A DNA stretch of 64,000 nucleotides from Macrostomum lignano (lineage: Eukaryota), in contig NIVC01000591.1 in NCBI GenBank assembly GCA_002269645.1, forward strand, positions 186,001-250,000, read 5' to 3'. The translations under genes and the position numbers were made by a program. Positions 9,272 through 62,696 of this stretch are shown here, piece after piece (position 1 is the stretch's first letter; every line of letters starts with the position of its first letter). The notes below the pieces were generated by a model. It saw only the letters and a list, made by a program, of their open reading frames with translations. It was not told the origin of the DNA and made no database searches.

Positions 9272-18524
<9,253 letters not shown>

Positions 18525-20166: not shown

Positions 20167-23100
20167 TTAAAATTTTGAACTAAAACTTCTTAGCAACAGG
20201 CAGAGAAGCAGACCAACAGCAGCCAAGCTGTGTACAGCTAGCAGCAACCTGTTGGCATGGCGACCAATCACAGACGACTTCAATCTGTTTATTGCTGGCA
20301 GCTGCGAGGCCAGGGTTGACAAGTCGGACTCGAAAGCCAAGCAGGCCGTCACCACCAGGAGAAAAGCGTTGGCACCCATGGTCAGGTGGCACAGCTGACT
20401 GGATGGTCGGTGGTCACCGGTGAAGGCCTGAGATGGGAGAGGGACAGTGACGTCATAGATGGAAGATGAGATATTTCGATAAGGTTCTATTGAAAGCGAC
20501 TCAACAGGGGCTTTTTAGAAACTGAGTTTTTTGTGGACATTCTTAGAAATCAGTAGACCTATGATAATTCTTAGAAATCAGTAGACCTATAATGATTCTC
20601 TAAATGAAAGTAGGATATATTTTTCTAGAAACAGATTTACCAGAAAGCTAATCGTGTTTATTAGAACACATATTTTAAAGTTATTAATTGATTTAAAAGA
20701 TCGGATTATTGGTTAAATTTATTAGAAAATCAGGTCAGACACCACTCACCAAATTAGAGCAGCAGGTAACCACAAAAGCTCCAATCATCACCAGACGAAC
20801 TTGCCGACACGGCAGCAGCCAGCCAACAACTCCATGAACATCATCTTTCCCTCGAACGTATCTGCCGGCAAACACTAGACTAGAAGCAGCCCTCAATCCA
20901 ATGTTAACGCAGTTAGCCAGCACAAAACCTGCGCAAGCTAATTCCTCTCCAACGCCAAACAGAGCCGGGCCAATTCGACGTATTGCGGTGGTGGCAGCCA
21001 CCGCGGTAGCTAAGAAGGCTACGGAATACCCGACCAGTCTGCGGTTGTGCGAGTCCACCTGAGGGTATGTGCGTAGGCGGTTGCTAGCTGTTGCTCTTAT
21101 CAATAGTCTATGGCCCAAACCTAGGGTACATTAGCGCTGTCTGTTATATTGAGCTACCGCATCGCCCATCACACTGCTAAGCCAATTAAGAGTCAATTTG
21201 AGGCGTTTTTTTGTCTGCGACTCTAAAACGACTCTGGGGCCGTAGAGTCGTATTTGAGGCGTGCTGGAGTCGCTGTAGAATCACTGAGTTGCCTCTAAAG
21301 CGCATCTGCGTCAATTTATGACAACGGTCGGTAAACTCCGGCGCGCGAGCCACATGCGGCCCGTAAAGCTTCTCTATCCGGCCCTCGGATTCTTTGAAAC
21401 TTTACAGTAGCAATCTGGCCCGCTCAAGCAGTGTTGCCACCGACTCTTGGCTCGCAAAAATCGCATGGGAAATAAAAATCGCAACTGCTTTGAAATAAAA
21501 AACATTGTTTCGAGCATGATTATTACCCCCCAGAATCTCACGATTTTTACCCCCAGAATCTCACGATTCTTACCCCCAGAATCTCACGATTCTCACTCCC
21601 AGAATCTCACGATTCTTACCCCCAGAATCTCACGATTCTTATTCCCAGAATCTCACGATTCTCACTCCCAGAATCTCACGATTCTCACTCCCAGAATCTC
21701 ACGATTCTTACCCCCAGAATCTCACGATTCTTACCCCCAGAATCTCACGATTCTTACCCCCAGAATCTCACGATTCTTACCCCCAGAATCTCACGATTCT
21801 CACTCCCAGAATCTCACGATTCTTACCCCCAGAATCTCACGATTCTTACCCCCAGAATCTCACGATTCTTACCCCCAGAATCTCACGATTCTCACCCCCA
21901 GAATCTCACGATTCTCACCCCCAGAATCTCACGATTCTCACCCCCAGAATCTCACGATTCTGACCCCCAGAATCTCACGATTCTCACCCCAGAACAAAAA
22001 GTAGCTGATAATTGCTGAAAAGAACAAAAAATCGCTCAGTTATTTAAAATCGCCCAGCAATTAAAATTCGCTGGGGTGGCAACACTGCGGCTCAAGGTCT
22101 CTTCTCAACTCTCTTACCTCCTTTCTCCCCTCTTCTCTCCTTTCTCCTCACCAATTTAATCTCTCCTCTCCTCTCTTGCCCTCCCTCTTTTCTCTCGTCT
22201 CACATCTGCTCTTCTCTCTCTGATGTATTCCCTCTCCTCTGCTGTTTCATCTGGCCCTTGAGGTAAGAGGCAGTTACGCCCGTATAACAACTCTATTTAG
22301 TCTATATGAGTTATTAAAAAGTTGAGCGCTAAAAAATGACTCTTGGGCGACTATTTTACAATTCTACAACTCAGACGATGCACTCGCGACTCAAAAGTTG
22401 CCTCTCTGTTGCATTACGCTCGTACAGTCGTTTGAGTCGTTAAAAAGTCACAAGAGTCGCCCCATGCAGAGTCGCTAGAGTAACTAGCGACTGTTTTGAA
22501 ATGACTCTTTAGCGATTCTTGTCACTTCAATGGAAAGAAGTTTTTAATGTGGGCCTTCAGCAATATAAAAATACGCTAAAGCCAAGTAACGCACCTCAAC
22601 TCTGGACATTGTAGCAAACATGAATGCCTCAGAAACGCCATTCCAAGCCAACAGCAGCACGTAGCAACTAAACAACCGAAGCAAATTCGGGCCCTCGCCT
22701 TCGCTCAAAGTGGCGCCGCTGTACAAATGAAGCAGCTGAGTGGAATAGGGCACGGAGAACAGAGCTACCGACCAGCCAATCAGGGACACTAATCTTAGCG
22801 CGCCACGCAAGTAGATCCCAGCCAGCGTGACCCGGTCCGGGTCCTGCTGCTCCGGCGATTGACCTCGACGCAGCGACTTGCCAAAGAAATGATAGGCGCC
22901 CTCTTCGACAGGCTGCAATAAAATTATTTGATGGTGTTGGCGCTGCTGATAGTAGTCGACAGTCACTGCCGAAAATCAAGGCGACAAGCAAGAAGACTCG
23001 CAACTTGCATTTTTAAAGAAGCTGTCACAAATTCCCTAACAATTTCGCTTTAGATTTTGGAATCGATGAATTGTTTCAATATGTTAAATATTGAATGTGA

Positions 23101-25361
23101 AAACTCAAATTCGAACTCAATACGCCGTCGTGACCTCTCCTCTCTATCACACTCTCTCTCTCTCTTTCTCATTAGATATGAGCGTCTCTCCCTCTCCCTC
23201 TCCCCATCTCAATCTCTCTCCTCTCTCTCCTTTGTTCTCTCTCTCATCTCTCAATCTCTCTCCTCTCTCCCTTGTTCTCTCGCTATCTCTCCCTCTCCCA
23301 GATCTCAATCTCTCATCTCTCAATCTCTCTCCTCTCTCCCTCTCCCCGATTTCAATCTCTCATCTCTCAATCTCTCTCCTCTCTCCCTCTCCCCGATTTC
23401 AATCTCTCATCTCTCAATCTCTCTCTCCTCTCTCCCTTGTTCTCTCTCTATCTCTCCCTCTCCCAGATCTCAATCTCTCATCTCTCAATCTCTCTCCTCT
23501 CTCCCTCTCCCCGATTTCAATCTCTCATCTCTCAATCTCTTTCCTCTCTCTCTATCTCTCCCTCTCCCCGATCTCAATCTCTCATCTCTCAATCTCTCTC
23601 CTCTCTCCCTCTCCCCGATTTCAATCTCTCATCTCTCAATCTCTTTCCTCTCTCTCTATCTCTCCCTCTCCCCGATCTCAATCTCTCATCTCTCAATCTC
23701 TCTCCTCTCTCCCTCTCCCCGATTTCAATCTCTCATCTCTCAATCTCTCTCCTCTCTCCCTCTCCCCGATTTCAATCTCTCATCTCTCAATCTCTCTCCT
23801 CTCTCCCTCTCCCCGATTTCAATCTCTCATCTCTCAATCTCTCTCCTCTCTCCCTCTCCCAGATCTTAATCTCTCATCTCTCAATCTCTCTCCTCTCTCC
23901 CTCTCCCCGATTTCAATCTCTCATCTCTCAATCTCTCTCCTCTCTCCCTCTCCCAGATCTTAATCTCTCATCTCTCAATCTCTCTCCTCTCTCCCTCTCC
24001 CCGATTTCAATCTCTCATCTCTCAATCTCTCTCCTCTCTCCCTCTCCCCGATTTCAATCTCTCATCTCTCAATCTCTTTCCTCTCTCCCTATCTCTCCCT
24101 CACCCCAATCTCAATCTCTCATCTCTCAATCTCTCTCCTCTCTCCCTCTCCACGATCTCAATCTCTCGTCTCTCAATCTCTCTCTTCTCTCTCTATCTCT
24201 CCCTCTCCCCGATCTCAATCTCTCATCTCTCAATCTCTCTCCTCTCTCCCTCGTTCTCTCTCTCTTCCTTTATCTCGCTCGCACACCCAGTACCAGTGGC
24301 TAACTGTATCTGTGGCCAACTTATTTTATTGTCAGGAAAATGCACGACACGGCAGATTCTTCACTCAACGGTCAATGGCCAGCAGCTTAAACTCTCACCT
24401 GAAACAGCAGTCGTGCAGCCAAGGACCCCAAATTGGACACACTATCCAGTAGTCCTTGCTCGGCCAGACTTAACAAATTAGTAAACGTCAACACGTACTT
24501 TTCACCCTCTGTTAGCAACTGTTTCACCGCGCATTGGCCTAGAAAAGATCGCACTAACGCCGTCTGAGCCGGGTCCAACGGTTCGGAGTTCGAATTTGGC
24601 GAAGCCGTTTCAATCGAAGACGCCGAACCAACCGTGAGTGCCGATCTGGCAAAATGCCAAGGCAAACGGAGCAGATTAGGCGACACAAGAGGCACCCCAA
24701 GCAAGCCGGCAAGACGTCTCTCTCCGCCCTCGGCACCCGGCCGAATCATCCTTCGAGCGCCTGCCCACATCACCGCCAGCAACACGCAGCCATAGATCAG
24801 CTGACCAACTGAATAGACCCTGATTGACCAATCTGGCGAGTGGGACAATGTCACGCCCACGCCGACAAAGACGCACCTGGCTAACTGGGCCCAGCCCTCA
24901 GCAGCTACGCGTCTACCCATCACCAAGTGAATCTGTAACAGAATCTGTAACGGCTCTGTTAACAGTTCGACCATAGCTGACCCGGCGTACAGACACACTT
25001 CCATAGTTGGCAGAGACAAAGACCACAGCGGGATCAAGACTACAGACCAGGCTAAACCGAACCAAGGTGCCAGCCAGAGTAAATCTATCAACGAGCGCAA
25101 TTGACTTTGAGTACTTGGAGCGCTGACGCAGGCCTTGCGAAACGGTTCCCTGGCAAAGAATGTCACAGTGGAATACAGCAATGTCAGCTGAGCCGCCTGG
25201 CCCAGTACCGACTTGGTCACGTGACGCAATACCCATGCATTCAAAATGAAGGTTGACAATCGGAATAAGGCATTCAGCGCGGCATTGAACACGGTGTGCT
25301 GCAAGGCTGAACTGAACAAGTTGCTGGTAGGGGAGGAGGCTGTAAACTCGGCTGGCTTCAT
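20167..25361 (-). CDS. RFT1: Protein RFT1 homolog (Man5GlcNAc2-PP-dolichol translocation)
   Basis: Exons 25361-24399, 22912-22595, 21058-20750, 20427-20167, all phase 0 with GT-AG. Motifs LFRLSTFILNAWVLR, LTLLYST.FFAREPFRKAC, KQLLTEGEKYV, NLGSLAARLLFQPVEE, LLLAWNGVSEAF, GFVLANCVN. Confidence 0.93.
21322..22284. mobile_element. hAT/Charlie-like MITE in RFT1 intron 2, hosting a nested MITE
   Basis: Left end CAACGGTCGGTAAACTCCGGCGCGCGAGCC (homologous to 3036). Right end TCTGGCCCTTGAG...AGTTACGCCCGT is a degenerate inverted match. No TSD found. Confidence 0.45.
21429..22087. mobile_element. MITE with CAGTGTTGCCACC TIRs (hAT-like) and an internal 23-bp array
   Basis: Perfect 13-bp TIRs CAGTGTTGCCACC / GGTGGCAACACTG; flanks CCGCTCAAG / CGGCTCAAG (9 bp, 1 mismatch). 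About 20 copies of CCCCCAGAATCTCACGATTCTTA at 21527-21992. Confidence 0.8.
23130..24275. repeat. CT-rich compound minisatellite in RFT1 intron 1
   Basis: Repeating CCGATTTCAATCTCTCATCTCTCAATCTCTCTCCTCTCTCCCTCT; source of the S/L-rich ORFs 23057-24303. Confidence 0.95.
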
Positions 25362-25502
25362 CTTGCGCTTGCTTGGTGCAACTGTATTTAGTTACAGTAA
25401 TAGAAGCCGTGCTTTTGACAATTGAACTGTTTTCAATTGCATCATGCAATAAATTTATGAGTTCATTGTCTTTCAATTACAATGCTTTTTTTGGCCGACA
25501 AG

Positions 25503-26320
25503 CTTGAGGATCTGAGAGGCTGGCCCAGCGACTGGATATCTGGGAGGCTGGCCCAGCAACTGAGGATCTGGGAGGCTGGCCCAGCGACTGGATATCTGGG
25601 AGGCTGGCCCAGCAACTGAGGATCTGGGAGGCTGGCCCAGCGACTGGATATCTGGGAGGCTGACCCAGCAACTGAGGATCTGGGAGGCTGGCCCAGCGAC
25701 TGAGGATCTGGGAGGCTGGCTCAGCAACTGAGGATCTGGGAGGCTGGCCCAGCGACTGAGGATCTGGGAGGCTGGCCCAGAACTGAGGATCTGGGAGGCT
25801 GGCCCAGAACTGAGGATCTGGGAGGCTGGCTCAGCAACTGAGAAACTGGGAAGTTGGCACAGCAACTGAGGAACTGGGAAGCTGGCACAGCAACTGAGGA
25901 TCTGGGAGGCTGGCCCAGCGACTGGGGATCTGGGAGGCTGGCCCAGCAACTGAGGATCTGGGAGGCTGGCCCAGCAACTGAGGATCTGGGAGGCTGGCCC
26001 AGCAACTGAGGAACTGGGAGGCTGGCCCAGCAACTGAGGTTCTGGGAGGCTGGCCCAGCGACTGGGGATCTGGGAGGCTGGCCCAGCGACTGAGGATCTG
26101 GGAGGCTGGCCCAGCAACTGAGGATCTGGGAGGCTGGCCCAGCAACTGAGGATCTGGGAGGCTGGCCCAGCAACTGAGGATTTGGGAGGCTGGCCCAGCG
26201 ACTGGGGATCTGGGAGGCTGGCCCAGCGACTGAGGATCTGGGAGGCTGGCCCAGCAACTGAGGATCTGGGAGGCTGGCCCAGCAACTGAGGATTTGGGAG
26301 GCTGGCCCAACAACTAAGGA
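25503..26320. repeat. 28-bp minisatellite ACTGAGGATCTGGGAGGCTGGCCCAGCA, array 1, upstream of RFT1
   Basis: About 29 units; bracketed on the minus strand by GTCAGT (26338) and TACAG (25382). Confidence 0.95.
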
Positions 26321-26795
26321 TCAGGGAAGCTGACTGACCTTCAGTAAAACTGATCAACTAAACTATTGATAGTTTAATTATTTGATAGAGTAATCCAAAA
26401 AACTGACACTGATGCATATCTATTATCTATTAATATATATTCTTATCAAAGACACATGTGAAGTTACACTGAGGAAGGAAACGCATCAATAATAACAGAG
26501 AATGTAATGAAAACTGTAAGCACCAAAAGAACTAGGTAAAAATGTATAAAATCAATAACTAATTTAAAAGACTAAATATAGCCAATCTGCCACCAAATTA
26601 TTTTAAAAAATCATGGAAAAATCTAGGAAGTTACTTCATTGTCCAATACTGAGATTCTTACAAGATCTATAAAAAAATGACTAGCGGATTCTACAACACA
26701 CCAAAGCCAGAGAAATGAATAAATAAATTTGACTTTTGTTAGCAGTCTAAATTGAAGCAATTCGCCAAACAAACAATTCAGTTATACTGCATCAA

Positions 26796-28583
26796 TTAGG
26801 CAGATGAAGATGCGACTCGACTTTCAATGATGGATTTCAACGCTTGTCCATCATTCTCGGTGTGCAGCGTCCAGATGCAGGTCTGGCCAACTCCGGTCAT
26901 GGCCGACACCCGGTAGCCCAGCAGGTGCAGGCGGTCCAGCACTTGGCGGGGGCACATCAGGGTTGTCCATTGGTAGCTGCGGTGGTGTATGGGGGCTTTG
27001 GTTAAGGCTTTTAGAATTCCTCAGCAACTGAGGATTAGTACCTGCAGTTGAGGATCTGGGATCTGTACATATGAGGATCTGGGAGGCTGGCCGAGCAACT
27101 GACACTCTGGGAGGCTGGCCGAGCAACTGACACTCTGGGAGGCTGGCTCAGAAACTGACACTCTGGGAGGCTGGCCCAGAAACTGACACTCTGGGAGGCT
27201 GGCCGAGCAACTGACACTCTAAGAGGCTGGCCCAGCAACTGGGAATCTGGGAGGCTGGCACAGCAAATGGGGATCTGGGAGGCTGGCCAAGCAACTGGGG
27301 ATCTGGGAGGCTGGCCCAGCAACTGGGGATTTGGGAGGCTGGCACAGCAACTGGGGATCTGGGAGGCTGGCCCAGCAACTGGGGATCTGGGAGGCTGGCC
27401 CAGCAACTGGGGATCTGGGAGGCTGGCCCAGCAACTGGGGATCTGGGAGGCTGGCCCAGCGACTGGGGATCTGGGAGGCTGGCACAGCAACTGAGGATCT
27501 GGGAGGCTGGCCCAGAAACTGGGGATCTGGGAGGCTGGCCCAGCAACTAGGGATCTGGGAGGCTGGCCCAGCAACTGGGGATCTGGGAGGCGGGCCAGCA
27601 ACTGGGGATCTGGGAGGCTGGCACAGCAACTGAGGATCTGGGAGGCTGGCCCAGAAACTGGGGATCTGGGAGGCTGGCCCAGAAACTGGGGATCTGGGAG
27701 GCTGGCTCAGCAACTGGGGATCTGGGAGGCTGGCACAGCAACTGAGGATCTGGGAGGCTGGCCCAGCAACAGGGGATCTGGGAGGCTGGCTCAGCAACTG
27801 GGGATTTGGGAAGCTGACCCAGCAACTGAGGATCTGGGAGGCTGGCAAAGCAACTGGGGATCTGGGAGGCTGGCAAAGCAACTGGGGATCTGGGAGGCTG
27901 GCAAAGAAACTGGGGATCTGGGAGGCTGGCTCAGCAACTGGGGATTTCGGAAGCTGACCCAGCAACTGAGTATCTGGGAAGCTGACCCAGCAACTGAGGA
28001 TCTGGGAGGCTGGCAAAGCAACTGGGGATCTGGGAGGCTGGCAAAGCAACTGGGGATCTGGGAGGCTGGCAAAGCAACTGGGGATCTGGGAGGCTGGCAA
28101 AGCAACTGGGGATCTGGGAGGCTGGCAAAGCAACTGGGGATCTTGGAGGCTGGCAAAGCAACTGGGGATCTGGGAGGCTGGCCCAGCAACTGAGAATCTG
28201 GGAGGCTGGCCCAGCAACTGGGGATTTGGGAGACTGGCACAGCAACTGGGGATTTGGGAGACTGGCACAGCAACTGGGGATTTGGGAGTTAGGTTTTGAT
28301 TAAGGATTAATGCCTGCACTGCCCAAGACAAAACAATAAAAACGGCTCACAAGTTATTGCCATCCTTCTTCTCCTTTTTGGCCCCCAAGAACTGCATGAG
28401 CACAGGGTCGCTCCACTCGTCCCCAACAAGAGTGGGTCCGCTTTCCTAACAAAGTGAACGCAAATTTTTCATATATGAATCAATCTCTGTATCAAATTCT
28501 CAGCAGCATTAAAATACTTCAATCATGGCAAACTATTAAGAACTTACCAGACGAACTTGACAGCTAATTAACAGGTAGGACAT
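26796..28583 (-). CDS. GCHFR: GTP cyclohydrolase I feedback regulatory protein (~103 aa)
   Basis: Exons 28583-28548 (MSYLLISCQVRL), 28445-28351 (ESGPTLVGDEWSDPVLMQFLGAKKEKKDGNN) and 26976-26796 (FYQWTTLMCPRQVLDRLHLLGYRVSAMTGVGQTCIWTLHTE + 19-aa tail). Canonical splice sites; hallmark MTGVGQT..W.LH motif. Confidence 0.95.
27040..28290. repeat. 28-bp minisatellite, array 2 (same family as 25503-26320), GCHFR intron 2
   Basis: ACTGGGGATCTGGGAGGCTGGC(C/A)(C/A)AGCA units. Confidence 0.95.
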
Positions 28584-28621
28584 TTTTAATTTATGACTTT
28601 AAAACTTGACAGGTGAAGTAT

Positions 28622-28834
28622 CTGAAACAATTAGAAATTATTATAACTGAAACTTGCGAACAATAATAATTTATAATTTTACTAAGTCAAACTCAGACAA
28701 AGTCAGACGAAAATTAGAATTAAAAGTAAAAAAATAATGCCAAAATTAGTTAATTACTTTTAATTATTACAATTATAAATAAACAAAACTGTCAATAAAA
28801 TCTTTTCTAAATCAAGCTAGTATATTGATTTATT
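28622..28834 (-). promoter_or_regulatory. Putative inter-cistronic region: poly(A) signal, U-rich tract, then splice acceptor
   Basis: On the minus strand: AATAAA at 28834-28829 after the MPST stop, ~200 nt of U-rich sequence, then TTCTAATTGTTTCAG (AG at 28623-28622) about 38 nt upstream of the GCHFR ATG. Confidence 0.5.
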
Positions 28835-28952
28835 AGTAGAGCACAACACAACAACCAGTATTAATCAACGAATCATTTCATGAAATTTCTTGCACAGCAA
28901 CAAAATAATGACATTAGAAAATGGGATATCCGGGATGTCAAATCAAGTCAAA

Positions 28953-31900
28953 TCAAGCGCCTCGCTCAGGTCCGGAGCCCACGGCTTTCAGATCCGATGG
29001 TCCCCTGGTAGCGAACTCCTCCCAGCTGCCATCGTAGACAGCTGCATCGGAGTTGCCAAGCACGTGAGCAGCCAGAGCCACGTGACAGGCCGTGATACCC
29101 GAGCCGCAGGTGGTCACCAATGGCCGGCTGGGGTCCAACCCGCTGGCTAAGAATTTCTTTCTAAGCTGATCCTCGGTGAGCATCCGGCCGCTCTCGGAGT
29201 CGTACAGGCTGCGGAAGAACAGGTTGGCTGCGCCTAGCGGGTGGCCAGCGGGGAGGCCGGCTCGGGGCTCCGGCTCCTCTCCGCGGAATCTCGCTGGGGA
29301 GCGGGCGTCCGCCACCTGCGGAGTGGTGGGGACGGGTGGGAGATAAGGCTGCTGTGTCCGGCTTGCTGGCTCTGGGTTTATCGATTTTTTTTCTTGCACA
29401 TCTACTGACCGGCCTACCCACTGTAGCTCGTGTCTATCTACCCCTTCTATCGTGTGTCTATCTACCATCTCTATCCCGTGCCTATCTACCCCTTCTATCG
29501 TGTGTCTATCTACCATCACTATCCCGTGTCTATCTACCATCTCTATCCCGTGTATATCTACTCCTTCTATCGTGTGTTTATCTACCAACTCTATCCCGTG
29601 TCTATCTACCCCTTCTATCGTGTGTCTATCTACCATCTCTATCCCGTGTCTATCTACCCCTTCTATCGTGTGTCTATCTACCATCTCTATCCCGTGCCTA
29701 TCTACCCCTTCTATCGTGTGTCTATCTACCATCTCTATCCCGTGTCTATCTACCATCTCTATCCCGTGTATATCTACTCCTTCTATCGTGTGTTTATCTA
29801 CCAACTCTATCCCGTGTCTATCTACCATCTCTATCCCGTGTATATCTACTCCTTCTATCGTGTGTCTATCTACCATCTCTATCCCGTGTCTATCTACCCC
29901 TTCTATCGTGTGTCTATCTACCATCTCTATCCCGTGTCTATCTACCCCTTCTATCGTGTGTCTATCTACCATCTCTATCCCGTGTCTATCTACCCCTTCT
30001 ATCGTGTGTCTATCTACCATCTCTATCCCGTGTCTATCTACCCCTTCTATCGTGTGTCTATCTACCATCTCTATCCCGTGTCTATCTACCATCTCTATCC
30101 CGTGTCTATCTACCATCTCTATCCCGTGTCTATCTACCATCTCTATCCCGTGTCCATCTACCCCTTCTATCGTGTGTCCATCTACCATCTCTACTCTATC
30201 TACCATCCCTATCCCGTGTCTATCTACCATCTCTATCCCGTGTATATCTACTCCTTCTATCGTGTGTCTATCTACCATCTCTATCCCGTGTCTATCTACC
30301 ATCTCTATCCCGTGTCTATCTACCCCTTCTATCGTGTGTCTATCTACCATCTCTATCCCGTGTCTATCTACCATCTCTATCCCGTGTCTATCTACCCCTT
30401 CTATCGTGTGTCCATCTACCATCTCTACTCTATCTACCATCCCTATCCCGTGTCTATCTACCATCTCTATCCCGTGTATATCTACCCCTTCTATCGTGTG
30501 TCTATCTACCATCTCTATCCCGTGTCTATCTACCCCTTCTATCGTGTGTCTATCTACCATCTCTATCCCGTGTCTATCTACCCCTTCTATCGTGTGTCTA
30601 TCTACCATCTCTATCCCGTGTCTATCTACCCCTTCTATCGTGTGTCTATCTACCATCTCTATCCCGTGTCTATCTACCATCTCTATCCCGTGTCTATCTA
30701 CCCCTTCTATCGTGTGTCCATCTACCATCTCTACTCTATCTACCATCCCTATCCCGTGTCTATCTACCATCTCTATCCCGTGTATATCTACTCCTTCTAT
30801 CGTGTGTCTATCTACCATCTCTATCCCGTGTCTATCTACCATCTCTATCCCGTGTCTATCTACCCCTTCTATCGTGTGTCTATCTACCATCTCTATTCCG
30901 TGTCTATCTACTCCTTTTATCGTGTGTCTATCTACCATCCCTATCCCGTGTCTATCTACCATCTCTATCCCGTGTCTATCTACTCCTTCTATCGTGTGTC
31001 TATCTACCATCTCTATCCCGTGTCTATCTACCATCTCTATCCCGTGTCTATCTACCCCTTCTATCGTGTGTCTATCTACCATCTCTATTCCGTGTCTATC
31101 TACCCCTTCTATCGTGTGTCCATCTACCATCTCTACTCTATCTACCATCCCTATCCCGTGTCTATCTACCATCTCTATCCCGTGTATATCTACTCCTTCT
31201 ATCGTGTGTCTATCTACCATCTCTATCCCGTGTCTATCTACCCCTTCTATCGTGTGTCTATCTGCCATCTCTATCCCGTGTCTATCTACCCCTTCTATCG
31301 TGTGTCTGTCTACCATCTCTACTCTATCTACCATCCCTATCCCGTGTCTATCTACCATCTCTATCCCGTGTCTATCTACTCCTTTTATCGTGTGTCTATC
31401 TACTACTCTCTATCCCGTGCCTATTAACCATCTCTAGTCTATCTATCATCTCTATCCCGTGTCTATCTACCATCTAACCATTTTATCTCCTATCTAGCCT
31501 GCATATATCTAGCTAATCTAATACCAAATCTAATCTTTTGAGTCACACAGTTCGACTGTAGCATATCTATCAGCACCGTGTACATCTCCCGTACCCAATT
31601 TACGCCATGCACCTTATTTTCCTCACCTGCACAGACGCAGACTGCAACGCCTTGCAAAACTCTTCAAAAGACCGATACAGAGCACTTTTCTTATCTTCGC
31701 TAGCTTGAAATTCAACCGACTGATAAACGGTTTTTAATGGGCCGCTGGTCACTCGCCGACCCTCGGCAACCCAGGCAGCCAGGCCTCCATCTAACACGCT
31801 GACAGCCTCGTGGCCAAACATGCGAAACATCCACCAGACCCTTGGCGCAAACATGCAATTATCGTAGACAATAACATGGCTATCATTGCCGATACCCAGG

Positions 31901-32157
31901 CGTTTGCCAACGTACTCGGCAAACTGAGCAGAGCTGGGCAAAGTGTTTGAGAAGCCAGTTTCTCTGGCGCTGCATTCTGGCACGCTGAAATGTCTGGCAC
32001 CGGGAATTCTTGGCGCCGCGGCGAATGAGGTTTCCACTGGGGCCGGGTAGCCGCCGGCATCAAGTATTCGAATTTTGTTATTAGCGGCATTGGATAGTCT
32101 GCTGGCCAGCCATGAACTGCTGACCAGAGCTGGGGTGACCGCCTGTCTGACTGCCAT
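28953..32157 (-). CDS. MPST: 3-mercaptopyruvate sulfurtransferase (two-domain rhodanese, 297 aa)
   Basis: Exons 32157-31627 and 29315-28953, joined Q|VADARS. Motifs PRIPGARHF, HVIVYD, APRVWWMFRMFGH..VSVLDGGL, active-site CGSGITAC (MPST-type) and VYDGSWEE. Confidence 0.92.
29425..31475. repeat. ~2-kb compound minisatellite (GTGTCTATCTACCATCTCTATCCC / CCCCTTCTATCGT) in the MPST intron
   Basis: Alternating related units; source of the 660-800-aa repeat ORFs. Confidence 0.97.
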
Positions 32158-32885
32158 GAAGTTATTAACAGACTTTACTACTGAAGGTGATATATAATGA
32201 AGATAATTTTTTGCAAATATTTATTCAATAAAACATTAAACTATCACTGAGATATCTAGACTTATGGGGGAATTGCTGAGATGGTAAGGATCATTTGGAA
32301 GTTGTTGGTAGGCAAAGCCAAAGTTAGATCACAGGACAGTTGGGGTTAAGGCATGAGTTAATGCATGCCTCACAAGTAGGGCACTGATTGCTGGTAGTAA
32401 CAAGTAAAATTTAAATGCAGGTTATGAAACCCAATAATCCTATTAGATTCTTATAGTCAGTTTTGAATTTTAAGTTTATTATAAAACAATATAAATTAAA
32501 AACAAATTTGTTTTAAAATGGTAGTGTTAATAAGTAAGAGAGTTGATCCTTTGGAAAAAATTGCCTTGCTAATGATAATGACTATTATAGCAACAATAAT
32601 ATTATAAATACATATTTATGAAAATAGCTAACTAAAAGGAATTTGACCCTCTATAATTATGAAGATATTGTGATAAAAAGCCATAGTTTTGCCTATAGTT
32701 GTCTAAAGGAGCCCACTAGATATTGCCAATGGAAATTAAATTTATAGGCCTACTAAGTACTATTAAGAAAGTAGACAAATAAAGATTTAAATTGTTAGAT
32801 TTCTTATATAACCAAAAATATTATCATTAAAAAAGGCAAGATAAAAGTTACATCTCTTTCACTTAAATTTAGGGAATACACTGAA

Positions 32886-37335: not shown

Positions 37336-38002
37336 TTTCTATTTACGGGGAAGTCTGCTATCTTTATGAAAGCTAATTTATTTTGTTGCTTTTTGGCTAA
37401 ATAAAAAAGAGATTCATAGCAAAATCTTTGTCCGTGACAATTTTTAATTGAATAAGGTGATTTTTAAAACTGAAGAAGGAATTGGTTCTTAAGAAAATGT
37501 GCCTTTTAATTTTTTTCATGAATAATTTTTGCTCCTTACTTTTTGGGCGCTCCGAAGGGGGACACTAGATTGCTAGTGCAAAACTGAAAGCGCAAATTTC
37601 TGTTAAAATCGAGCATTCCGTAATAAGGTCATGCCAGCTGACCAACCCCAGACCTCTGAAGGCTTCCGTGAATTAATTGCTGCAGACAATCACCGCAAAA
37701 GAACAAAGGGCCACGGACAGTGCCTATATCATGTAAAAGGGCAGCTGCCGCCCCTCTGTGGCTCTACCCCCCCTCGTTTTGCTATGCATAGACAGGGGCG
37801 CCCACCAAGAGGCAGGGATGGGACACCAAATATTCCCCCCCCCCCTCGGCGGTCCTCGGCGGTTCGCGGTCCTACCCAACAATTAAATGTGGTCAGTGGT
37901 CACACTCCAAAGACTTATACGATTATAGCACACGTTTGGTATCAAGAGAGGTGTTTGGTATTGCTGGATATATATATACCTCTCTTGATGCATATGTATC
38001 GG

Positions 38003-40050
38003 CTTGACTTACTTGACTTACTTGGCTGTCCCAGAGGGACACAGCGGGAAGGCGCGAACACCCATTCTGCTAATCCCTGAATGGCCGACGCGTCGCTATA
38101 GATGAAGGGTTGGCGCCGCCCAGGGAGGTCCCCCAGTGTCGCAAGCAGCTATAGTGCTCTCTGGAAATGAGAGTTCAGCCCTGCGGGTGGCCCGAAGGCA
38201 GCGCATGAGCTGATTAAAGTTTTCGGGTTTGCACGCTTCAGTAATAGATGTGTGTGACCCGAGGTAAGTGAGTCTGGCTCGCGTAAAGGCGGGACAGATG
38301 CTGACGAAATGCTCAGCGGTTTCGTCACCTGAGTTACAGAAGCTTCAGGTGGCGTTGGTGGCGTTGCCCTGCAGGTACTGGTGCCTAGAGAAGCAGCCGT
38401 GACCTGAGAGGGTCATGGTGGCAGCCCGGATGTCTCTGCGCGAGAGGCTCAAGAGGAGCTTCCGGAGCTGGTGAGAGGGCTGAGGGACAGCGCCTCTGGA
38501 TTGCCTGCAGGTAGTGCAGTTCGCCCAAGTCGAGCGGTGCTGGGTCCTGATCCACGTTTTGATTCGCGAGTCAATGACACAGCCAGGAATCGGGACAAGG
38601 GGTTCGGGACCGAGAGAGGAGCCGGAGGCGCCAACTTTTGCAAGGGCGTCAGCCAACTCATTTCCTCGGATCCCCATATGCCCCGGAATCCGTTTAAGGG
38701 TGATTTTGTTGGTGGAGATCAACACGTTGAGGAGTTTGATACAGTCGAGGACTGTATCAGAATTGGTGCTGCAGCCACTGATGGCGTGCAAGGCAGCTTT
38801 GCTGTCCGAATGGAAAATGATGTTCTTACCGGTAACGCCAGTGGCGAGGACCTCTGCGATGCGGGAGCTGATGGCGAGAACTTCATTTTGGAAGACACTG
38901 GAGTTGACCCCAGTGTACTGAGCGTGGGTTGCGATGACCCTTCCGTTCAGGAAGATTCCAACACCAAAGCCGGTGTTGGCTGACTGTTTAGAACCGTCGG
39001 TGTAGCAATGAAGCTCACCAGGGTTCCAGTGGTCATTGATGGTATCGCATGAGTCGATAGCTACAGAGTAGCGTTGTCTCAGGTTGAGCGTTGAGGCAAT
39101 GCCATCGGTGAAGACGCGATTGGCCTGACACTCGTTGAGAATGTTGAGGCACAGGTCGCTATGCGGGACGAGGTTCCGCTTAGCAGGTGCCCTCATGTAA
39201 AGGAATTTGACACCGGCATCGAGTAAACGCCGCGTCGTTCTAGCCGCCTCACCCCTGACGAAGAGGTCGAGAGGCGGTAGATTAAGGAAGGCCCCCATGC
39301 CGGCAAAGGGCGTGGACCTGGTGGCGTTGCAGATAAGCCTACACGCTCTGCCCTGGATCGTGTTGAGCAAATCTGCATGACTTTTGACCTGGGTAGCGCT
39401 GACCCAGACAACCGAGGCGTACGTAATGGCAGGTCTAACTACGGAAGTGTAGATCCACCAAAGTCGCTTTGTGGATAGACCCCAAGAGGTGCCAAGTGCT
39501 CGTCGGAGCTGGGCCAGGATGGCTGAGGCACGCTTGGCATTTGCTTTCACGTGGAAGGACCAGTTGAGCCGGTGGTCAAGTATGACCCCGAGACATCTGG
39601 TCTGGTGCGCGAAGGCAATATCTCTGCCGTATAGCTGCAGAGGTCGTATGTTCCAGCGTATTCTGTGGGTGAACATATGGCAACAGTTTTGGGCTCAGAT
39701 AGTTCCAGACCGTTGTCATTGGCCCAGGATTCTGCTTTGCGGATAAAGCTCTGCATCAGATCCCTGAGCGTGCTGGGGGATGGCCCTGCCACAATGGCAG
39801 TGACGTCGTCAGCATACCCGACTTTAGGACGGGATCAGGTCGGGAGTCGCCCAGAAGAGCGTCCATGACCAGGTTCCAGAGCGTCGGGGTGTGGACTCCG
39901 CCTTGGGGTCCGCCCTTACAGACTCTGGCGGAGGCAGTTTGCCCGAGAAGTTGGGCAGTGACCGTACGGTTAGAGATCATGTACATGATCCACCGTATGA
40001 GGGTAACGTGAGCTTTGCGGTTTTGAAAGGCCCTCGCCCTTCAAATATCT
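38003..40050 (-). mobile_element. 5'-truncated non-LTR retrotransposon (R1/LOA-like, I group): RT C-terminus + RNase H + CCHC
   Basis: RT motifs LDI.GAF (broken), GPQGGV..PTLWNLVMD, YADD, LGVILD..LNW. RNase H: YTDGSK, SDSKAAL, PGHMGIRGNELADALAK. CCHC knuckle broken by TGA at 38345. Tail (CAAGTAAGT)2. Candidate TSD TGCATATGTATCGG (37989-38002) / TGCATACATGTATCGG (40077-40092). Several frameshifts. Confidence 0.92.
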
Positions 40051-40981
40051 AGTTATAGCTATAGCTATAGCTATAGTGCATACATGTATCGGATATACTC
40101 GTACATGTATGCACGTAACCACACCCAATATTGTAGATCACGTTACCCACATGCTTGTTCATAGGTTTCTGAATAGAAACTCGAGCCGCCTTTGAATTGA
40201 ACTACATTGGCTGAATAATTGAACGCACAGTATATAGCTAAGCGACTTAATTTCGCTGTTTATTAGTATACGCGAGCGGAAATTTATGTCAGGAGTTCAA
40301 TTCTGTCCACGAGAATTGCCTGCCTGCGTAGGGGTGTCTTCGCTATATATTAACATGCAATATATAGTTTGCTTATTTCGGATCCCATTTTGAGCCCAGT
40401 TGCTCATGCATGTAGATTAGCTCGTATTGAGTCCGAAATAAGATACAGGGGGGGGGGGGCGCTGCATTGAGTCAAAGCAACTGCAAGGCCACGGGTTTTT
40501 TTCAGAGTGAGCATTCTCAGTCCACATGAGTTTGCATTAAATAATTCTGGCATGATATAGTGCTGTATTTACTCAGGGTGGTTATGAAATGCTTGAGCTT
40601 AATAATGTACCAATGTGAATTATAGTTGAGCAATTGAAAAGAAGGGATCGAAGTCATTTAATATGAGAATGTGAACTCCCGGTACAGCTGGTTAACTCTC
40701 GATCCGGGGTTGAGCTTACAGTTTTAATCGCCTATAATATTTTTGCGTAACAGATCGCGCACCCAATAATTTCCTCCGATTATATAGAGCAGTGCAGGAC
40801 AAGGCGGAGAAGAATTCAAAAAAGCTATAGTTAGGGTGCCATAAAAAACCCAGAGCAAGATCCACAAGCTCCTAAACTGAACATTTCTCGCTTAAGACGC
40901 CACATACCAGGTATTTTACCGATCTACACATCTATAAAACTAATTAGAAACTAAGTTTCCGGCGCAGTGTTTTCTTCACTA

Positions 40982-42514
40982 ATGGATGATACTAAGCAGC
41001 AACCGGAAACGGTGAAAAATGTCTGCATGACGGAGACTTCTCGGCGAAAATGCCTTCTGCTAATGAGCGCCTGTTTAATTCTGATGATGGCTGGCCAGTG
41101 TGTCTCAGGCCCTATATTTGCCAATTTCATAAAGTTCAGCTATGGACTAAACCAGAGACAACTGGACTTTAGCGTTGCTCTACTGTACCTGGGAACAGTG
41201 CTAATCTTTCTCAGCGGACTCTTTTACGACCGTTTTGGTACGAGAGCTTCGGTCGTCTTCAGTGGCGTCCTCTCCACGCTGTCCATGACTTTTGTTGCCG
41301 TCGCAATGGCGTATCCAGAGCCGCTGCGCCAGAACTTATGGCTGCTGTTCATTCTGCTGTTCCTGTACGGTCACAGCTTCAACTACAGCTACGTGGCTGC
41401 GATTGGTTGCTGCATGAAAAGTTTCTCATCGAGTCAACGTGTCTTTGTCATGACGCTGGCGGACAACTTCTTCAGTCTGGGTCCCCCAGTTGTGGCCTTC
41501 ATCTACTACGTGGTCTTCGACAATATGCACAGAAGTAACACCGACCAGAGACCTGTAGGCACCCGGATCGTGCTCCTAGTTTTAAATGCCACTATTCATG
41601 TGTTCGCTTTTATCTTTCTAACACCGTTCGATGATTCTTTGGATAAAGAAAAACCTAGCGAATCGAGCCCTATTCTAGACAAACAGCCACCGGAACAGGA
41701 TCGACAGAAACTACAGGATGCATTCAACTCTAACATGAACGAAACGCATACTGCGACGGCTGAGACGATCGACACTCGACCGCAGGACGGTTTCCTGACG
41801 CAGACACAATACTTTTTTACCGTGTGCTGCTCAGATCGCTTCATGCCTCTCATGCTGGGCGTTGCTCTGTCCATCGGAGCAAACCTGACAACCTTTCTAA
41901 ACCTGACTAGCGTCACTCGAAGTTTGTCGCTGACTCAATACGACGTTTACTATTTTTGGTTTCCAACTCTGGTGGGCATAGCTTGGCGCTGTCTGATTGG
42001 GCTTCTTACTGACAGACACCTACCGAAGGCAAGTCATCGATCTGCTGTTTTGCTTGCCAGCGTGGTCTGCTTCGGCGCTCCTTCGACGCTGCTTCTTAGC
42101 GTCCCACTGCTTCCAGGCGTGTCAGCTTTTGGTATTACGATTACGGCCTACGTTTTTGATAGTATCAACAACGCCACCCTATTCACCATTCCACCCGTGA
42201 TCATCTCTATGACTGAAAAGCCGCACCTGTTCGGACGGCTCTACTCTTCCTGTCTTCTTTTAGCTTCAACAACTGGCCTGCTTCTTATTCTGCAATTCGG
42301 CGCTCTGTACGACGCTCAAATTCGAACAACTTCCGGTGATAAGACAGGCGGCGTCGCGTTCAATTCCACGGCCCCTGGGACTGCTGCTAGCATACCGGAG
42401 TGCTTTGGCTACGTCTGCTACATGTACGGAGGCGTGGCAAGCACTGTGTGCCAGCTTGTGTCCATCGTTTGCTTCTCCTACTATACAATTTCTTTGCGGC
42501 GGGCCAACTTGTGA
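40982..42514 (+). CDS. Intronless MFS transporter, nodulin-like/MCH1-type
   Basis: Open frame of ~510 codons from ATG 40982, about 12 hydrophobic segments with a central hydrophilic loop. FIKFSYGLNQRQL...GLFYDRFGTR and GLLTDRH match the MFS motif A repeats. Confidence 0.85.
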   Translation: MDDTKQQPETVKNVCMTETSRRKCLLLMSACLILMMAGQCVSGPIFANFIKFSYGLNQRQLDFSVALLYLGTVLIFLSGLFYDRFGTRASVVFSGVLSTLSMTFVAVAMAYPEPLRQNLWLLFILLFLYGHSFNYSYVAAIGCCMKSFSSSQRVFVMTLADNFFSLGPPVVAFIYYVVFDNMHRSNTDQRPVGTRIVLLVLNATIHVFAFIFLTPFDDSLDKEKPSESSPILDKQPPEQDRQKLQDAFNSNMNETHTATAETIDTRPQDGFLTQTQYFFTVCCSDRFMPLMLGVALSIGANLTTFLNLTSVTRSLSLTQYDVYYFWFPTLVGIAWRCLIGLLTDRHLPKASHRSAVLLASVVCFGAPSTLLLSVPLLPGVSAFGITITAYVFDSINNATLFTIPPVIISMTEKPHLFGRLYSSCLLLASTTGLLLILQFGALYDAQIRTTSGDKTGGVAFNSTAPGTAASIPECFGYVCYMYGGVASTVCQLVSIVCFSYYTISLRRANL

Positions 42515-62237: not shown

Positions 62238-62696
62238 ATGCGTTTGCTTTCAATGAATATTTGGTTTGCAAATTTCCTGCCACTGGCATTCGGTAATTTG
62301 TGCCCCCAGCCTTACAGCCTCCGGGCTGGCAAGTGCGTCCATATTAATGAGTTAAACAGTCACACGTGGTGCAAAGCGAACGCTGAGTGCATCTCAATCG
62401 GAGGGGAGCTCATCAGCAACTACGGCACCCTGATCCTGCTTGGCAGCATGTCAATTTCGGTTCCCAATCATCTTTGGCTTGGAGTCACCGACTTGCCTGA
62501 CGAGAGAGACAGGAGCAGGTCTGGCTGGCATTTGATCAACAACAAAGGAGTTCTGCCGCTTAATGATACATTGTGGGGGACCGAGGAACCTAATAATATT
62601 GACAAAAACCAGGACTGTTTAATCATGCAGCAAAATGCTCCGGGCAAGTTGGCTGATCTCCCCTGCTCGAACCTGCGCGGCTTCATGTGTGAATAA
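62238..62696 (+). CDS. Secreted C-type lectin (EPN motif)
   Basis: Signal peptide, CPQPY..KCVH, WCKANAEC...GGEL, LWLGVTD, WGTEEPNN..QDC, DLPCS...FMCE*. Intronless. Confidence 0.85.
   Translation: MRLLSMNIWFANFLPLAFGNLCPQPYSLRAGKCVHINELNSHTWCKANAECISIGGELISNYGTLILLGSMSISVPNHLWLGVTDLPDERDRSRSGWHLINNKGVLPLNDTLWGTEEPNNIDKNQDCLIMQQNAPGKLADLPCSNLRGFMCE

What the first reader, a model, noticed from the sequence alone, without database searches (positions are those of the whole stretch)
20167..32181. Candidate polycistronic (SL trans-spliced) operon MPST -> GCHFR -> RFT1
Seen: three intact conserved genes on the minus strand. Only 370 bp separate the MPST stop (28953) from the GCHFR ATG (28583). That gap holds AATAAA (28834), a U-rich tract and a strong acceptor TTTCAG 38 nt before the ATG, with no canonical GTRAGT donor. 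GCHFR to RFT1 is 1.4 kb, over half of it satellite, again ending in an acceptor 21 nt before the ATG. MPST also has an acceptor (32181) just before its ATG. Established: poly(A) site + U-rich spacer + unpaired acceptor is the architecture of nematode and flatworm operons resolved by spliced-leader trans-splicing. Inference: one transcript would couple persulfide/H2S metabolism (MPST), BH4 feedback control (GCHFR) and N-glycan precursor handling (RFT1). I know of no description of this trio, but cannot search.
Basis: partly seen in the sequence, partly recalled or inferred. Interest (0 to 1): 0.75.

Follow-up and report, generated by a model that had tools for sequence, protein, structure and literature searches.

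The report
Flatworm operon: MPST, GFRP, maybe RFT1
This stretch comes from the published genome of the flatworm Macrostomum lignano, an animal known to pack genes into spliced-leader operons; the first two genes are already annotated there as one transcription unit, so this is an ordinary example, not a discovery.

Summary
Three intact minus-strand genes (MPST, GFRP/GCHFR, RFT1) lie at the stated coordinates, with a 369-nt spacer and a 1,434-nt spacer that is 58% satellite. The stated AATAAA and AG acceptor motifs are present.

The window is 100% identical to scaffold NIVC01000591.1 of the Macrostomum lignano Mlig_3_7 assembly. This flatworm has one 35-nt spliced leader (SL). About 30% of its genes are trans-spliced and about 15% sit in operons.

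In the public annotation MPST is Mlig032028.g1 and GFRP is Mlig032028.g2. By the authors' naming rule, these are two genes cut from one assembled precursor transcript. Two independent gene models also fuse them. So the first pair is effectively already catalogued as an operon.

RFT1 (Mlig000671.g3) is annotated as a separate unit. Its membership is plausible but unproven: once the satellite is subtracted, the spacing is about 85-145 nt, close to the species' roughly 100-nt mode.

I could not reach any SL-bearing reads, so trans-splicing is inferred, not shown. Functional coupling of the three genes is unsupported; trematode RFT1 has a different upstream neighbour.

Side finding: SL-like bases at the MPST start codon and upstream of RFT1 may be scars from polishing the assembly with RNA-seq. 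If so, they mark the true acceptors.

The parts
28953..32157 (-). MPST (3-mercaptopyruvate sulfurtransferase; BOX15_Mlig032028g1). Exons 32157-31627 and 29315-28953 including the TGA stop. 297 aa with two rhodanese domains. The active-site motif reads TCGSGITAC.
32181..32186 (-). CTTCAG acceptor-like motif 24 nt upstream of the MPST ATG. It is identical in all four M. lignano copies.
32155..32160 (-). TTCATG at the MPST start codon, a variable site. The other Mlig_3_7 copies read TGCATG, which equals the last 6 nt of the SL. The ML2-based model P0149 has Gln (CAG) here, which would give a TTCCAG acceptor. A related species (L002) has TTGCAG| with no ATG. This is the likely real trans-splice junction, with the AUG donated by the SL.
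32369..32373 (-). GTGAG donor-like motif 192 nt upstream of the 32181 acceptor. A non-coding cis 5' exon is therefore not excluded.
29429..31475 (-). 24-bp satellite (about 87 copies) filling MPST intron 1.
28584..28952 (-). MPST-GFRP spacer: 369 nt, 25% GC, U-rich on the RNA, no GTRAG donor. The three paralogous copies carry about 165 nt more just after the stop (537-539 nt against 372 nt).
28829..28834 (-). AATAAA, the probable MPST poly(A) signal. It lies 182 and 207 nt upstream of the two candidate acceptors.
28647..28652 (-). Distal TTTCAG acceptor candidate for GFRP. It fits the M. lignano trans-splice motif [T/C]TNCAG and is intact in all four copies.
28622..28627 (-). Proximal TTTCAG acceptor candidate for GFRP, 38 nt before the ATG. 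It reads TTTCTG in copy L003.
26796..28583 (-). GFRP/GCHFR (GTP cyclohydrolase I feedback regulatory protein; BOX15_Mlig032028g2). Exons 28583-28548, 28445-28351 and 26976-26796 including the TAA stop. 103 aa.
27075..28288 (-). 28-bp satellite in GFRP intron 2. It is the same family and orientation as the array in spacer 2, so transcription of GFRP must pass through this repeat.
25362..26795 (-). GFRP-RFT1 spacer: 1,434 nt, or 606 nt once the satellite is subtracted.
26373..26378 (-). ATTAAA, the only canonical-type poly(A) signal after GFRP, 41 nt before the satellite. It is not conserved in copies L001 and L003, so the GFRP 3' end is uncertain.
25505..26332 (-). 28-bp satellite array (about 30 copies) inside spacer 2.
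25443..25455 (-). AATTTATTGCATG, an exact copy of the last 13 nt of the M. lignano SL. It ends 81 nt before the RFT1 ATG on the sense strand. It may be an SL scar marking the RFT1 trans-splice junction at 25443|25442.
25382..25387 (-). It does not fit the [T/C]TNCAG motif.
20167..25361 (-). RFT1 (Man5GlcNAc2-PP-dolichol translocation protein homolog; BOX15_Mlig000671g3). Exons 25361-24399, 22912-22595, 21058-20750 and 20427-20167 including the stop. 616 aa. Its introns hold further satellites. The next gene downstream is convergent.

Best explanation
The window is Macrostomum lignano, scaffold NIVC01000591.1 at positions 186001-250000 of assembly Mlig_3_7.

MPST and GFRP are two cistrons of one RNA polymerase II transcript. 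MPST mRNA is cleaved and polyadenylated about 20 nt after the AATAAA at 28834. About 165-190 nt further on, the single 35-nt M. lignano spliced leader is trans-spliced to a TTTCAG acceptor (28647 or 28622). This gives GFRP its cap and 5' end.

RFT1 is probably a third cistron of the same precursor. Its spacer is inflated by an 828-bp satellite. Without the satellite, the distance from the likely GFRP 3' end to the RFT1 5' end is only about 85-145 nt.

The unit ends at RFT1 because the next gene is convergent. It starts at MPST because no same-strand gene is annotated within about 10 kb upstream. The grouping reflects shared transcription of conserved housekeeping genes, not a shared pathway.

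Shown here: the gene models, the organism, the spacing, the motifs and the shared transcriptional-unit name.
Inferred: trans-splicing at these particular acceptors, and transcription through spacer 2.

My estimate is about 0.75-0.8 for the MPST-GFRP pair and about 0.5 for the full trio.
For: 1. The window is 100.000% identical, without gaps, to 25,195 bp of GCA_002269645.1 scaffold NIVC01000591.1.
2. M. lignano has one SL. About 30% of genes are trans-spliced and 15% are in operons. The operon rule is same-strand neighbours, a trans-spliced downstream gene, and a repeat-adjusted distance under 1 kb, with a mode near 100 bp. Repeats are known to inflate operon spacers and to split assembled transcriptional units (PMC8629364).
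3. The GenBank names are MPST = Mlig032028g1 and GFRP = Mlig032028g2, with adjacent accessions. On the paralogous scaffold they are Mlig004516g1 and g3. Supplementary Fig. 5a of PMC5730564 shows that genes MligN.g1 and MligN.g2 are cut from transcriptional unit MligN.1 at SL and poly(A) peaks.
4. Two independent chimeric MPST+GFRP models exist, UniRef A0A1I8H258 and A0A1I8GYW8. Chimeric models are a recognised sign of flatworm operons (PMC12582326).
5. Spacer 1 holds AATAAA, two [T/C]TNCAG acceptors and no GTRAG donor.
6. The same gene order and spacers occur in paralogous copies L001 and L003. Copy L004 runs off its contig just after the GFRP start, so it shows only MPST and spacer 1.
7. The MPST ortholog in a related species has no ATG. 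It has an in-frame acceptor exactly at the start-codon position, which implies an AUG donated by the SL.
8. The last 13 nt of the SL lie on the sense strand, ending 81 nt before the RFT1 ATG.
9. The spacer-2 satellite is the same array that is transcribed within GFRP intron 2.
Against: - I examined no SL-bearing read, poly(A) tag or transcription-start data.
- RFT1 sits in a separate transcriptional-unit cluster in the public annotation.
- The RFT1-proximal AGs (ATACAG, AAACAG) do not fit the trans-splice motif.
- The acceptor motifs are only mildly improbable by chance: 7% for the last 70 nt of spacer 1.
- Spacer 1 is very AT-rich and holds a TATAAAT about 25-50 nt upstream of the acceptors, so an internal promoter cannot be excluded.
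- Transcript assemblers can merge close neighbours through read-through.
- The SL-like 13-mer is significant only as a suffix-anchored match. A whole-SL local alignment is not significant (8 of 60 shuffles). By ungapped 17-nt identity it scores 14/17 against two other sites at 13/17.
Confidence: 0.72

Rival explanations
1. Only MPST and GFRP are co-transcribed. RFT1 is a separate gene with its own promoter, lying in or just after the satellite. It may or may not be trans-spliced on its own outron.
For: RFT1 has a different transcriptional-unit prefix (Mlig000671) in all three annotated copies. The raw spacer is 1.4 kb. No [T/C]TNCAG lies within about 1.1 kb of its ATG. In trematodes RFT1 has a different upstream neighbour.
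Against: The authors of the M. lignano operon study state that transcriptional units split at repeat-rich operon spacers. The repeat-adjusted spacing is about 85-145 nt, at the operon mode. The same satellite is transcribed within GFRP intron 2. The SL-suffix 13-mer upstream of RFT1 points to trans-splicing.
Confidence: 0.3
2. These are three independent, closely spaced genes, each with its own promoter. The shared transcriptional unit and the chimeric models are assembly or prediction artefacts caused by read-through and by the short gap.
For: The AT-rich spacer holds TATA-like sequence. The acceptor motifs are not strongly non-random. Gene predictors often fuse neighbours. I saw no RNA evidence directly.
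Against: A gap of roughly 180 nt between the poly(A) signal and the next gene is typical of trans-spliced pairs in this 764-Mb genome, and atypical otherwise. The published pipeline (TBONE) cuts units only at experimental SL or poly(A) peaks. Of genes conserved with human, 45% are trans-spliced in this species.
Confidence: 0.13
3. The three genes are grouped because their functions are linked: persulfide/H2S metabolism, BH4 feedback control and N-glycan precursor flipping. The operon would exist to co-regulate them.
For: Only the co-location itself, which is kept in the recent paralogous copies.
Against: No pathway connects the three. In Schistosoma japonicum and Opisthorchis felineus, RFT1 instead follows a small HLH gene on the same strand, and no rhodanese or GFRP gene is called within the 10 kb fetched on either side. 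The paralog copies are too recent to show selection on gene order. In M. lignano, operon genes are simply enriched for conserved genes.
Confidence: 0.03

Closest known systems
Macrostomum lignano multi-gene transcriptional units and operons (Wudarski et al. 2017, PMC5730564; Ustyantsev & Berezikov 2021, PMC8629364). The published example is unit Mlig030697.1, which holds genes .g1 and .g2.
   Same: Same organism and same assembly. The naming pattern is the same (Mlig032028.g1/.g2). The genes are same-strand neighbours with a short AT-rich spacer and a [T/C]TNCAG acceptor. A repeat inflates one spacer.
   Different: None in kind. RFT1 is not joined to the unit in the annotation. I could not see the SL and poly(A) tracks for this locus.
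Caenorhabditis elegans SL2-type operons
   Same: A poly(A) signal, then a U-rich spacer of about 100-200 nt, then an unpaired 3' splice site ahead of the downstream cistron. Partners are functionally unrelated housekeeping genes.
   Different: M. lignano has a single SL and no specialised SL2. The spacers here tolerate kilobase-scale satellites. The flatworm SL ends in AUG.
Trematode and cestode candidate operons and chimeric gene models (PMC12582326). The HLH-to-RFT1 pair seen here in Schistosoma japonicum is an example.
   Same: RFT1 lies downstream of a same-strand gene. In S. japonicum the gap is 167 nt with a TTACAG acceptor 27 nt before the ATG. O. viverrini has a chimeric HLH+Rft-1 model.
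   Different: The upstream partner differs (HLH, not GFRP). The MPST-GFRP-RFT1 order is therefore not ancestral to flatworms.
Flatworm SL 3'-terminal AUG used as the initiator methionine (Cheng et al. 2006, J Biol Chem 281:733, cited in PMC12582326; also noted for Macrostomum in PMC10468722)
   Same: In the related-species contig L002, and in the ML2-based model P0149, the MPST reading frame starts directly at an acceptor with no ATG of its own. The SL's AUG would be in frame.
   Different: In this window an ATG is written at that very position. Whether it is real or a polishing artefact is open.

Membership tests
SL-resolved operon, M. lignano definition (PMC8629364) | The organism carries out spliced-leader trans-splicing | tested here: met
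   The window is 100% identical to M. lignano Mlig_3_7. The SL and its usage are documented.
SL-resolved operon, M. lignano definition (PMC8629364) | Immediately adjacent genes on one strand, with no opposite-strand gene between them | tested here: met
   Gene models and the public annotation of the same scaffold.
SL-resolved operon, M. lignano definition (PMC8629364) | Repeat-adjusted intergenic distance under 1 kb | tested here: met
   From coding end to coding start: 369 nt, and 1,434 - 828 = 606 nt. Using the likely UTR ends, the spacings are about 180-200 nt and about 85-145 nt.
SL-resolved operon, M. lignano definition (PMC8629364) | The downstream gene carries the SL (a peak of SL reads at its 5' acceptor) | not testable with these tools
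   No M. lignano RNA reads or contigs were reachable. Only indirect evidence exists.
SL-resolved operon, M. lignano definition (PMC8629364) | One precursor transcript spans the cistrons - MPST-GFRP pair | tested here: met
   Indirect. The two genes share the transcriptional-unit prefix Mlig032028 (.g1/.g2), and Mlig004516 (.g1/.g3) on the paralog. Chimeric models appear.
SL-resolved operon, M. lignano definition (PMC8629364) | One precursor transcript spans the cistrons - GFRP-RFT1 pair | tested here: not met
   RFT1 is in a separate unit cluster, Mlig000671.g1-g3, in all three copies. The authors warn that units split at repeats, so this is weak negative evidence.
SL-resolved operon, M. lignano definition (PMC8629364) | Acceptor of the [T/C]TNCAG type with no upstream cis donor | tested here: inconclusive
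   GFRP: two TTTCAG and no GTRAG (met). MPST: CTTCAG, but a GTGAG lies 192 nt upstream. RFT1: only ATACAG and AAACAG are near the ATG. The published motif was found at only 9,551 of 21,754 sites.
C. elegans-type SL2 operon | A specialised second SL (SL2) is used for downstream cistrons | not tested
   The literature reports a single 35-nt SL in M. lignano. This locus therefore works like an SL2 operon but should not be filed as one.
3-mercaptopyruvate/thiosulfate sulfurtransferase (tandem rhodanese) | Two rhodanese domains with the catalytic Cys loop CG(S/T)G(V/I)T | tested here: met
   PF00581, two matched stretches, E = 2.8e-22. The loop reads TCGSGITAC in exon 2. Identity to vertebrate MPST is 41-48%.
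GFRP (PF06399) and RFT1 (PF04506) | Full-length match to the family profile | tested here: met
   GFRP covers profile positions 2-83 of 83, E = 1.6e-33. Rft-1 covers 4-506 of 512, E = 1.2e-96.

The most novel reading that the evidence does not exclude
The SL-like bases at two of the three 5' ends may be real genomic sequence. These are the ATG/TGCATG exactly at the MPST start codon and the 13-nt SL suffix 81 nt before the RFT1 ATG. They would be fossils of trans-spliced mRNA copied back into the genome. Such fossils would turn an SL-donated AUG into a genome-encoded one, and they differ between very recent paralogs of one genome.

The more likely and less novel variant (about 0.4) is technical. 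The same bases were written into Mlig_3_7 when it was Pilon-polished with RNA-seq reads. That would create false start codons and erase true acceptors at trans-splice sites.
Probability: 0.12. Interest if true: 0.55.

Novelty: already known. Interest (0 to 1): 0.12.

Why it matters
It matters little as biology. It is one of thousands of predicted operons in a species where operons are documented, and its first two genes are already annotated as one transcriptional unit.

Two practical points follow.
1. It illustrates that M. lignano operon spacers can hide kilobase satellites. Raw intergenic distance and assembled transcriptional units therefore under-call operons, and RFT1 is a likely example.
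2. If the SL-like bases at the MPST and RFT1 5' ends are RNA-polishing scars, users of Mlig_3_7 should distrust ATG codons that coincide with trans-splice sites. Such scars could also be mined as markers of trans-splice acceptors.

Tried and rejected
- **Rfam scan of the window:** no hit, so no SL RNA gene is present. The SL 5' 20-mer is absent even with 3 mismatches.
- **Exact-protein look-ups for RNA contigs:** The single-exon ORFs of MPST and RFT1 are not on record. No transcript 5' ends of M. lignano could therefore be inspected.
- **Literature and supplement searches:** searches for Mlig004516, Mlig032028, Mlig000671, GCHFR, RFT1, MPST and SRR28338166 returned nothing. No per-gene trans-splicing table was reachable.
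- **Whole-SL local alignment against the window:** the best hit is the site upstream of RFT1, but it is not significant (8 of 60 shuffled SLs score as high). I kept only the narrower suffix-anchored observation, as suggestive.
- **A second SL-like spot at 40354 (-):** it shares 9 nt of the SL suffix and has GCGAAGAC nearby. I read it and dismissed it as chance; it has no SL RNA architecture.
- **CDS starts of the 5'-partial MPST models:** I tried to use them to locate the annotated mRNA 5' end. Copy L001 fits a start right after the ATG. The other three copies start 14-15 nt further in, at no AG. This stays unexplained.
- **Transcriptional-unit numbers as a length rank:** I dropped this idea as inconsistent with the data.
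- **Conservation among the four M. lignano copies:** uninformative, because the copies are too similar.
Full report
**What is in the sequence.**
The region holds three minus-strand genes with canonical GT-AG introns.
- MPST has exons 32157-31627 and 29315-28953 (297 aa).
- GFRP/GCHFR has exons 28583-28548, 28445-28351 and 26976-26796 (103 aa).
- RFT1 has exons 25361-24399, 22912-22595, 21058-20750 and 20427-20167 (616 aa).

Pfam confirms the families: Rhodanese 2.8e-22, GFRP 1.6e-33, Rft-1 1.2e-96. Several introns and one spacer are filled with tandem satellites.

- The first spacer is 369 nt, with AATAAA at 28834.
- TTTCAG ends at 28622, 38 nt before the GFRP ATG.
- The first spacer has no GTRAG donor.
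- The second spacer is 1,434 nt, and 828 nt of it is a 28-bp satellite.
- ATACAG ends at 25382, and CTTCAG ends at 32181.

I add two things. There is a second TTTCAG ending at 28647, and a GTGAG donor at 32373, upstream of the MPST acceptor. Taken alone the motifs are weak. In simulated spacers of the same composition, a YTNCAG falls in the last 70 nt 7% of the time.

**Which organism.**
The best MPST relatives were Macrostomum lignano proteins. Their apparent 80% identity came from frameshifted N-termini in the deposited models.

Fetching the RFT1 locus of scaffold NIVC01000591.1 (assembly GCA_002269645.1, Mlig_3_7) gave 25,195 bp that are 100.000% identical to window 35361-10167, without gaps. 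The window is therefore that scaffold, at positions 186001-250000.

My hand-built GFRP and RFT1 proteins equal PAA80279.1 and PAA80278.1 exactly. MPST residues 7-297 equal PAA80280.1.

**What is known for this species.**
M. lignano has one 35-nt spliced leader, CGGTCTCTTACTGCGAAGACTCAATTTATTGCATG. About 30% of its genes are trans-spliced and about 15% are assigned to operons.

The operon rule is same-strand neighbours, a trans-spliced downstream gene, and a repeat-adjusted intergenic distance under 1 kb, with a mode near 100 bp. The enriched acceptor motif is [T/C]TNCAG. The authors note that repeats inflate operon spacers and split assembled transcriptional units (PMC8629364).

The Mlig_3_7 annotation assembles 'transcriptional units', many of which are precursor RNAs. 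It cuts them into genes at experimentally mapped SL and poly(A) peaks (PMC5730564). Supplementary Fig. 5a of that paper shows the naming rule: unit Mlig030697.1 contains genes Mlig030697.g1 and Mlig030697.g2.

**The first pair.**
On this scaffold MPST is BOX15_Mlig032028g1 and GFRP is BOX15_Mlig032028g2, with adjacent accessions. On a paralogous scaffold they are Mlig004516g1 and Mlig004516g3. Two unrelated proteins can share a prefix only if they come from the same unit. The published annotation therefore already treats MPST and GFRP as one precursor cut into two mRNAs.

Two ML2-based UniRef models (A0A1I8H258 and A0A1I8GYW8) independently fuse MPST to GFRP exon 2. Chimeric models of this kind are a recognised symptom of flatworm operons (PMC12582326).

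The anatomy fits. The distance from AATAAA to the two candidate acceptors is 182-207 nt, the tract is U-rich, and there is no cis donor. Paralogous copies L001 and L003 keep the full gene order; L004 ends just after the GFRP start. All three carry about 165 nt more just after the MPST stop than the window does (537-539 nt against 372 nt). One copy has the proximal acceptor as TTTCTG, while the distal one is intact in all four.

I rate co-transcription with SL resolution of this pair at about 0.75-0.8. The remaining doubt is that I saw no SL read, and that the AT-rich spacer could hide a promoter.

**RFT1.**
All three annotated RFT1 copies belong to a different unit cluster (Mlig000671.g1-g3). 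The public annotation therefore does not join RFT1 to GFRP. That is weak negative evidence, because an 828-bp satellite lies between them.

With the satellite removed, the distance from the only ATTAAA after GFRP (26378) to the RFT1 5' region is about 85-145 nt, at the species' operon mode. The same satellite, in the same orientation, fills GFRP intron 2, so the polymerase demonstrably reads through it.

The AGs nearest the ATG (ATACAG, AAACAG) do not fit the motif. However, the last 13 nt of the SL (AATTTATTGCATG) occur exactly once in the window. They lie on the sense strand at 25455-25443, ending 81 nt before the RFT1 ATG. A suffix match of that length is expected about 0.002-0.01 times in 128 kb (my own estimate). 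A looser whole-SL alignment test is not significant, and by ungapped identity the site is only marginally the best. I treat it as suggestive.

I rate the full trio at about 0.5.

**The 5' end of MPST and a possible assembly artefact.**
The MPST start-codon site varies in a telling way.
- The window reads AACTTCATG|GCAGTC.
- The three other Mlig_3_7 copies read AACTGCATG|GCAGCC, and TGCATG is the end of the SL.
- The ML2-based model P0149 reads ...NNFQAVRQ. It has CAG where the window has ATG, which would make a perfect TTCCAG| acceptor.
- A Logan contig from a related species (SRR28338166, 78% identical protein) reads AACTTGCAG|GCAGGC. It has an in-frame stop upstream and no ATG at all.

In those versions the SL's terminal AUG would supply the initiator in frame. 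This mechanism is known in flatworms (Cheng et al. 2006, cited) and has been noted for Macrostomum.

Mlig_3_7 was polished with Pilon using RNA-seq reads as well as DNA reads. SL-bearing reads could therefore have overwritten a few bases upstream of trans-splice junctions. That would explain the same-length 3-nt or 6-nt substitutions at MPST and the 13-nt SL suffix before RFT1.

Alternatively, the bases are real. I could not test this, because no raw DNA reads or M. lignano contigs were reachable. Either way the pattern argues that MPST and RFT1 mRNAs carry the SL.

One detail stays unexplained. The GenBank MPST coding sequence on this scaffold is 5'-partial and starts at Val7 (window 32139), despite the in-frame ATG.

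**Limits of the unit and context.**
The gene after RFT1 is convergent: an 880-aa product on the + strand. No gene is annotated in the roughly 10 kb upstream of MPST. Un-annotated ORFs there are an RNase H/retroelement fragment at 38345-39676 (-) and an MFS transporter at 40967-42514 (+).

**Function and conservation.**
Nothing links the three functions. In Schistosoma japonicum and Opisthorchis felineus, RFT1 follows a small HLH gene on the same strand. The S. japonicum gap is 167 nt, with a TTACAG acceptor 27 nt before the ATG. O. viverrini has a chimeric HLH+Rft-1 model.

RFT1 is thus often a tightly spaced downstream gene in flatworms, but with different partners. The MPST-GFRP-RFT1 order is not ancestral, and a functional reading is unsupported.

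**Verdict.**

This is a known kind of system and, for the pair, an already catalogued instance, so interest is low. The one thing worth passing on is the possible RNA-polishing scar at trans-splice sites in this assembly.

Noticed in passing
window 32155-32160 (-); L001 about 9995-10000; L002 52-60: The MPST start-codon site reads ATG in the window and TGCATG (the SL's last 6 nt) in three paralogous copies. It is CAG in an ML2-based protein model, and a bare TTGCAG acceptor with no ATG in a related species. This suggests an AUG donated by the SL. Since Mlig_3_7 was polished with RNA-seq, SL bases may have been written into the assembly.
   Followed up: partly
window 25443-25455 (-): There is an exact 13-nt copy of the SL 3' end (AATTTATTGCATG), ending 81 nt before the RFT1 ATG on the sense strand. 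Copy L003 is less SL-like at the same place. It could be an SL scar marking the RFT1 trans-splice junction.
   Followed up: partly
window 32139 (-): The GenBank MPST coding sequence on this scaffold (PAA80280.1) is flagged partial and starts at Val7, although an in-frame ATG lies 18 nt upstream. The paralog models start at other nearby positions, and none follows an AG. Where the annotated mRNA 5' end really lies is unexplained.
   Followed up: partly
window 27075-28288 and 25505-26332 (-): The same 28-bp satellite, in the same orientation, lies on both sides of GFRP exon 3 and its 3'UTR. The exon looks embedded in one array. Array lengths differ between the paralogous copies.
   Followed up: partly
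window about 28940 (-), versus L001 13382-13558: The window copy has about 165 nt less sequence just after the MPST stop than the three other M. lignano copies (spacer 372 nt against 537-539 nt). This probably explains why its transcriptional unit has a separate cluster name (Mlig032028 versus Mlig004516).
   Followed up: partly
L006 9585-10001 (S. japonicum); L007 (O. felineus); P0211 (O. viverrini): In trematodes RFT1 sits directly downstream of a small HLH gene on the same strand. The S. japonicum gap is 167 nt with a TTACAG acceptor 27 nt before the ATG, and one species has a chimeric HLH+Rft-1 model. This is a candidate trematode operon with a different partner.
   Followed up: partly
window 38345-39676 (-) and 37631-38080 (+): A GC-rich island holds a 443-aa ORF with an RNase H domain, a retroelement fragment, in the otherwise AT-rich region upstream of MPST. 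It is not annotated in GenBank.
   Followed up: partly
window 40967-42514 (+): A single-exon 515-aa ORF for a major-facilitator (nodulin-like) transporter lies divergent to MPST, about 9 kb away. It does not appear among the annotated genes of the paralogous locus.
   Followed up: partly
window 46350-47525 (-) and 51114-52184 (-): Two near-identical paralogs encode a DXD-motif glycosyltransferase (Pfam Gly_transf_sug). A short secondary Pfam match covers only the generic DXD segment. This is a tandem duplication about 4.8 kb apart.
   Followed up: no
window 62238-62696 (+): An ORF encodes a C-type lectin domain.
   Followed up: no
window 9272-10069 (+) to about 18.5 kb: This is the start of the convergent 880-aa gene downstream of RFT1. 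Its first exon is very acidic and has no Pfam match. Its introns carry many different satellites (periods 4, 15, 20, 22, 30, 33 and 48 bp).
   Followed up: no
window 40320-40365 (-): A 9-nt SL suffix (ATTGCATG plus one base) has GCGAAGAC, another SL fragment, 14 nt downstream. I read the region and it has no SL RNA gene architecture, so it is probably chance.
   Followed up: yes
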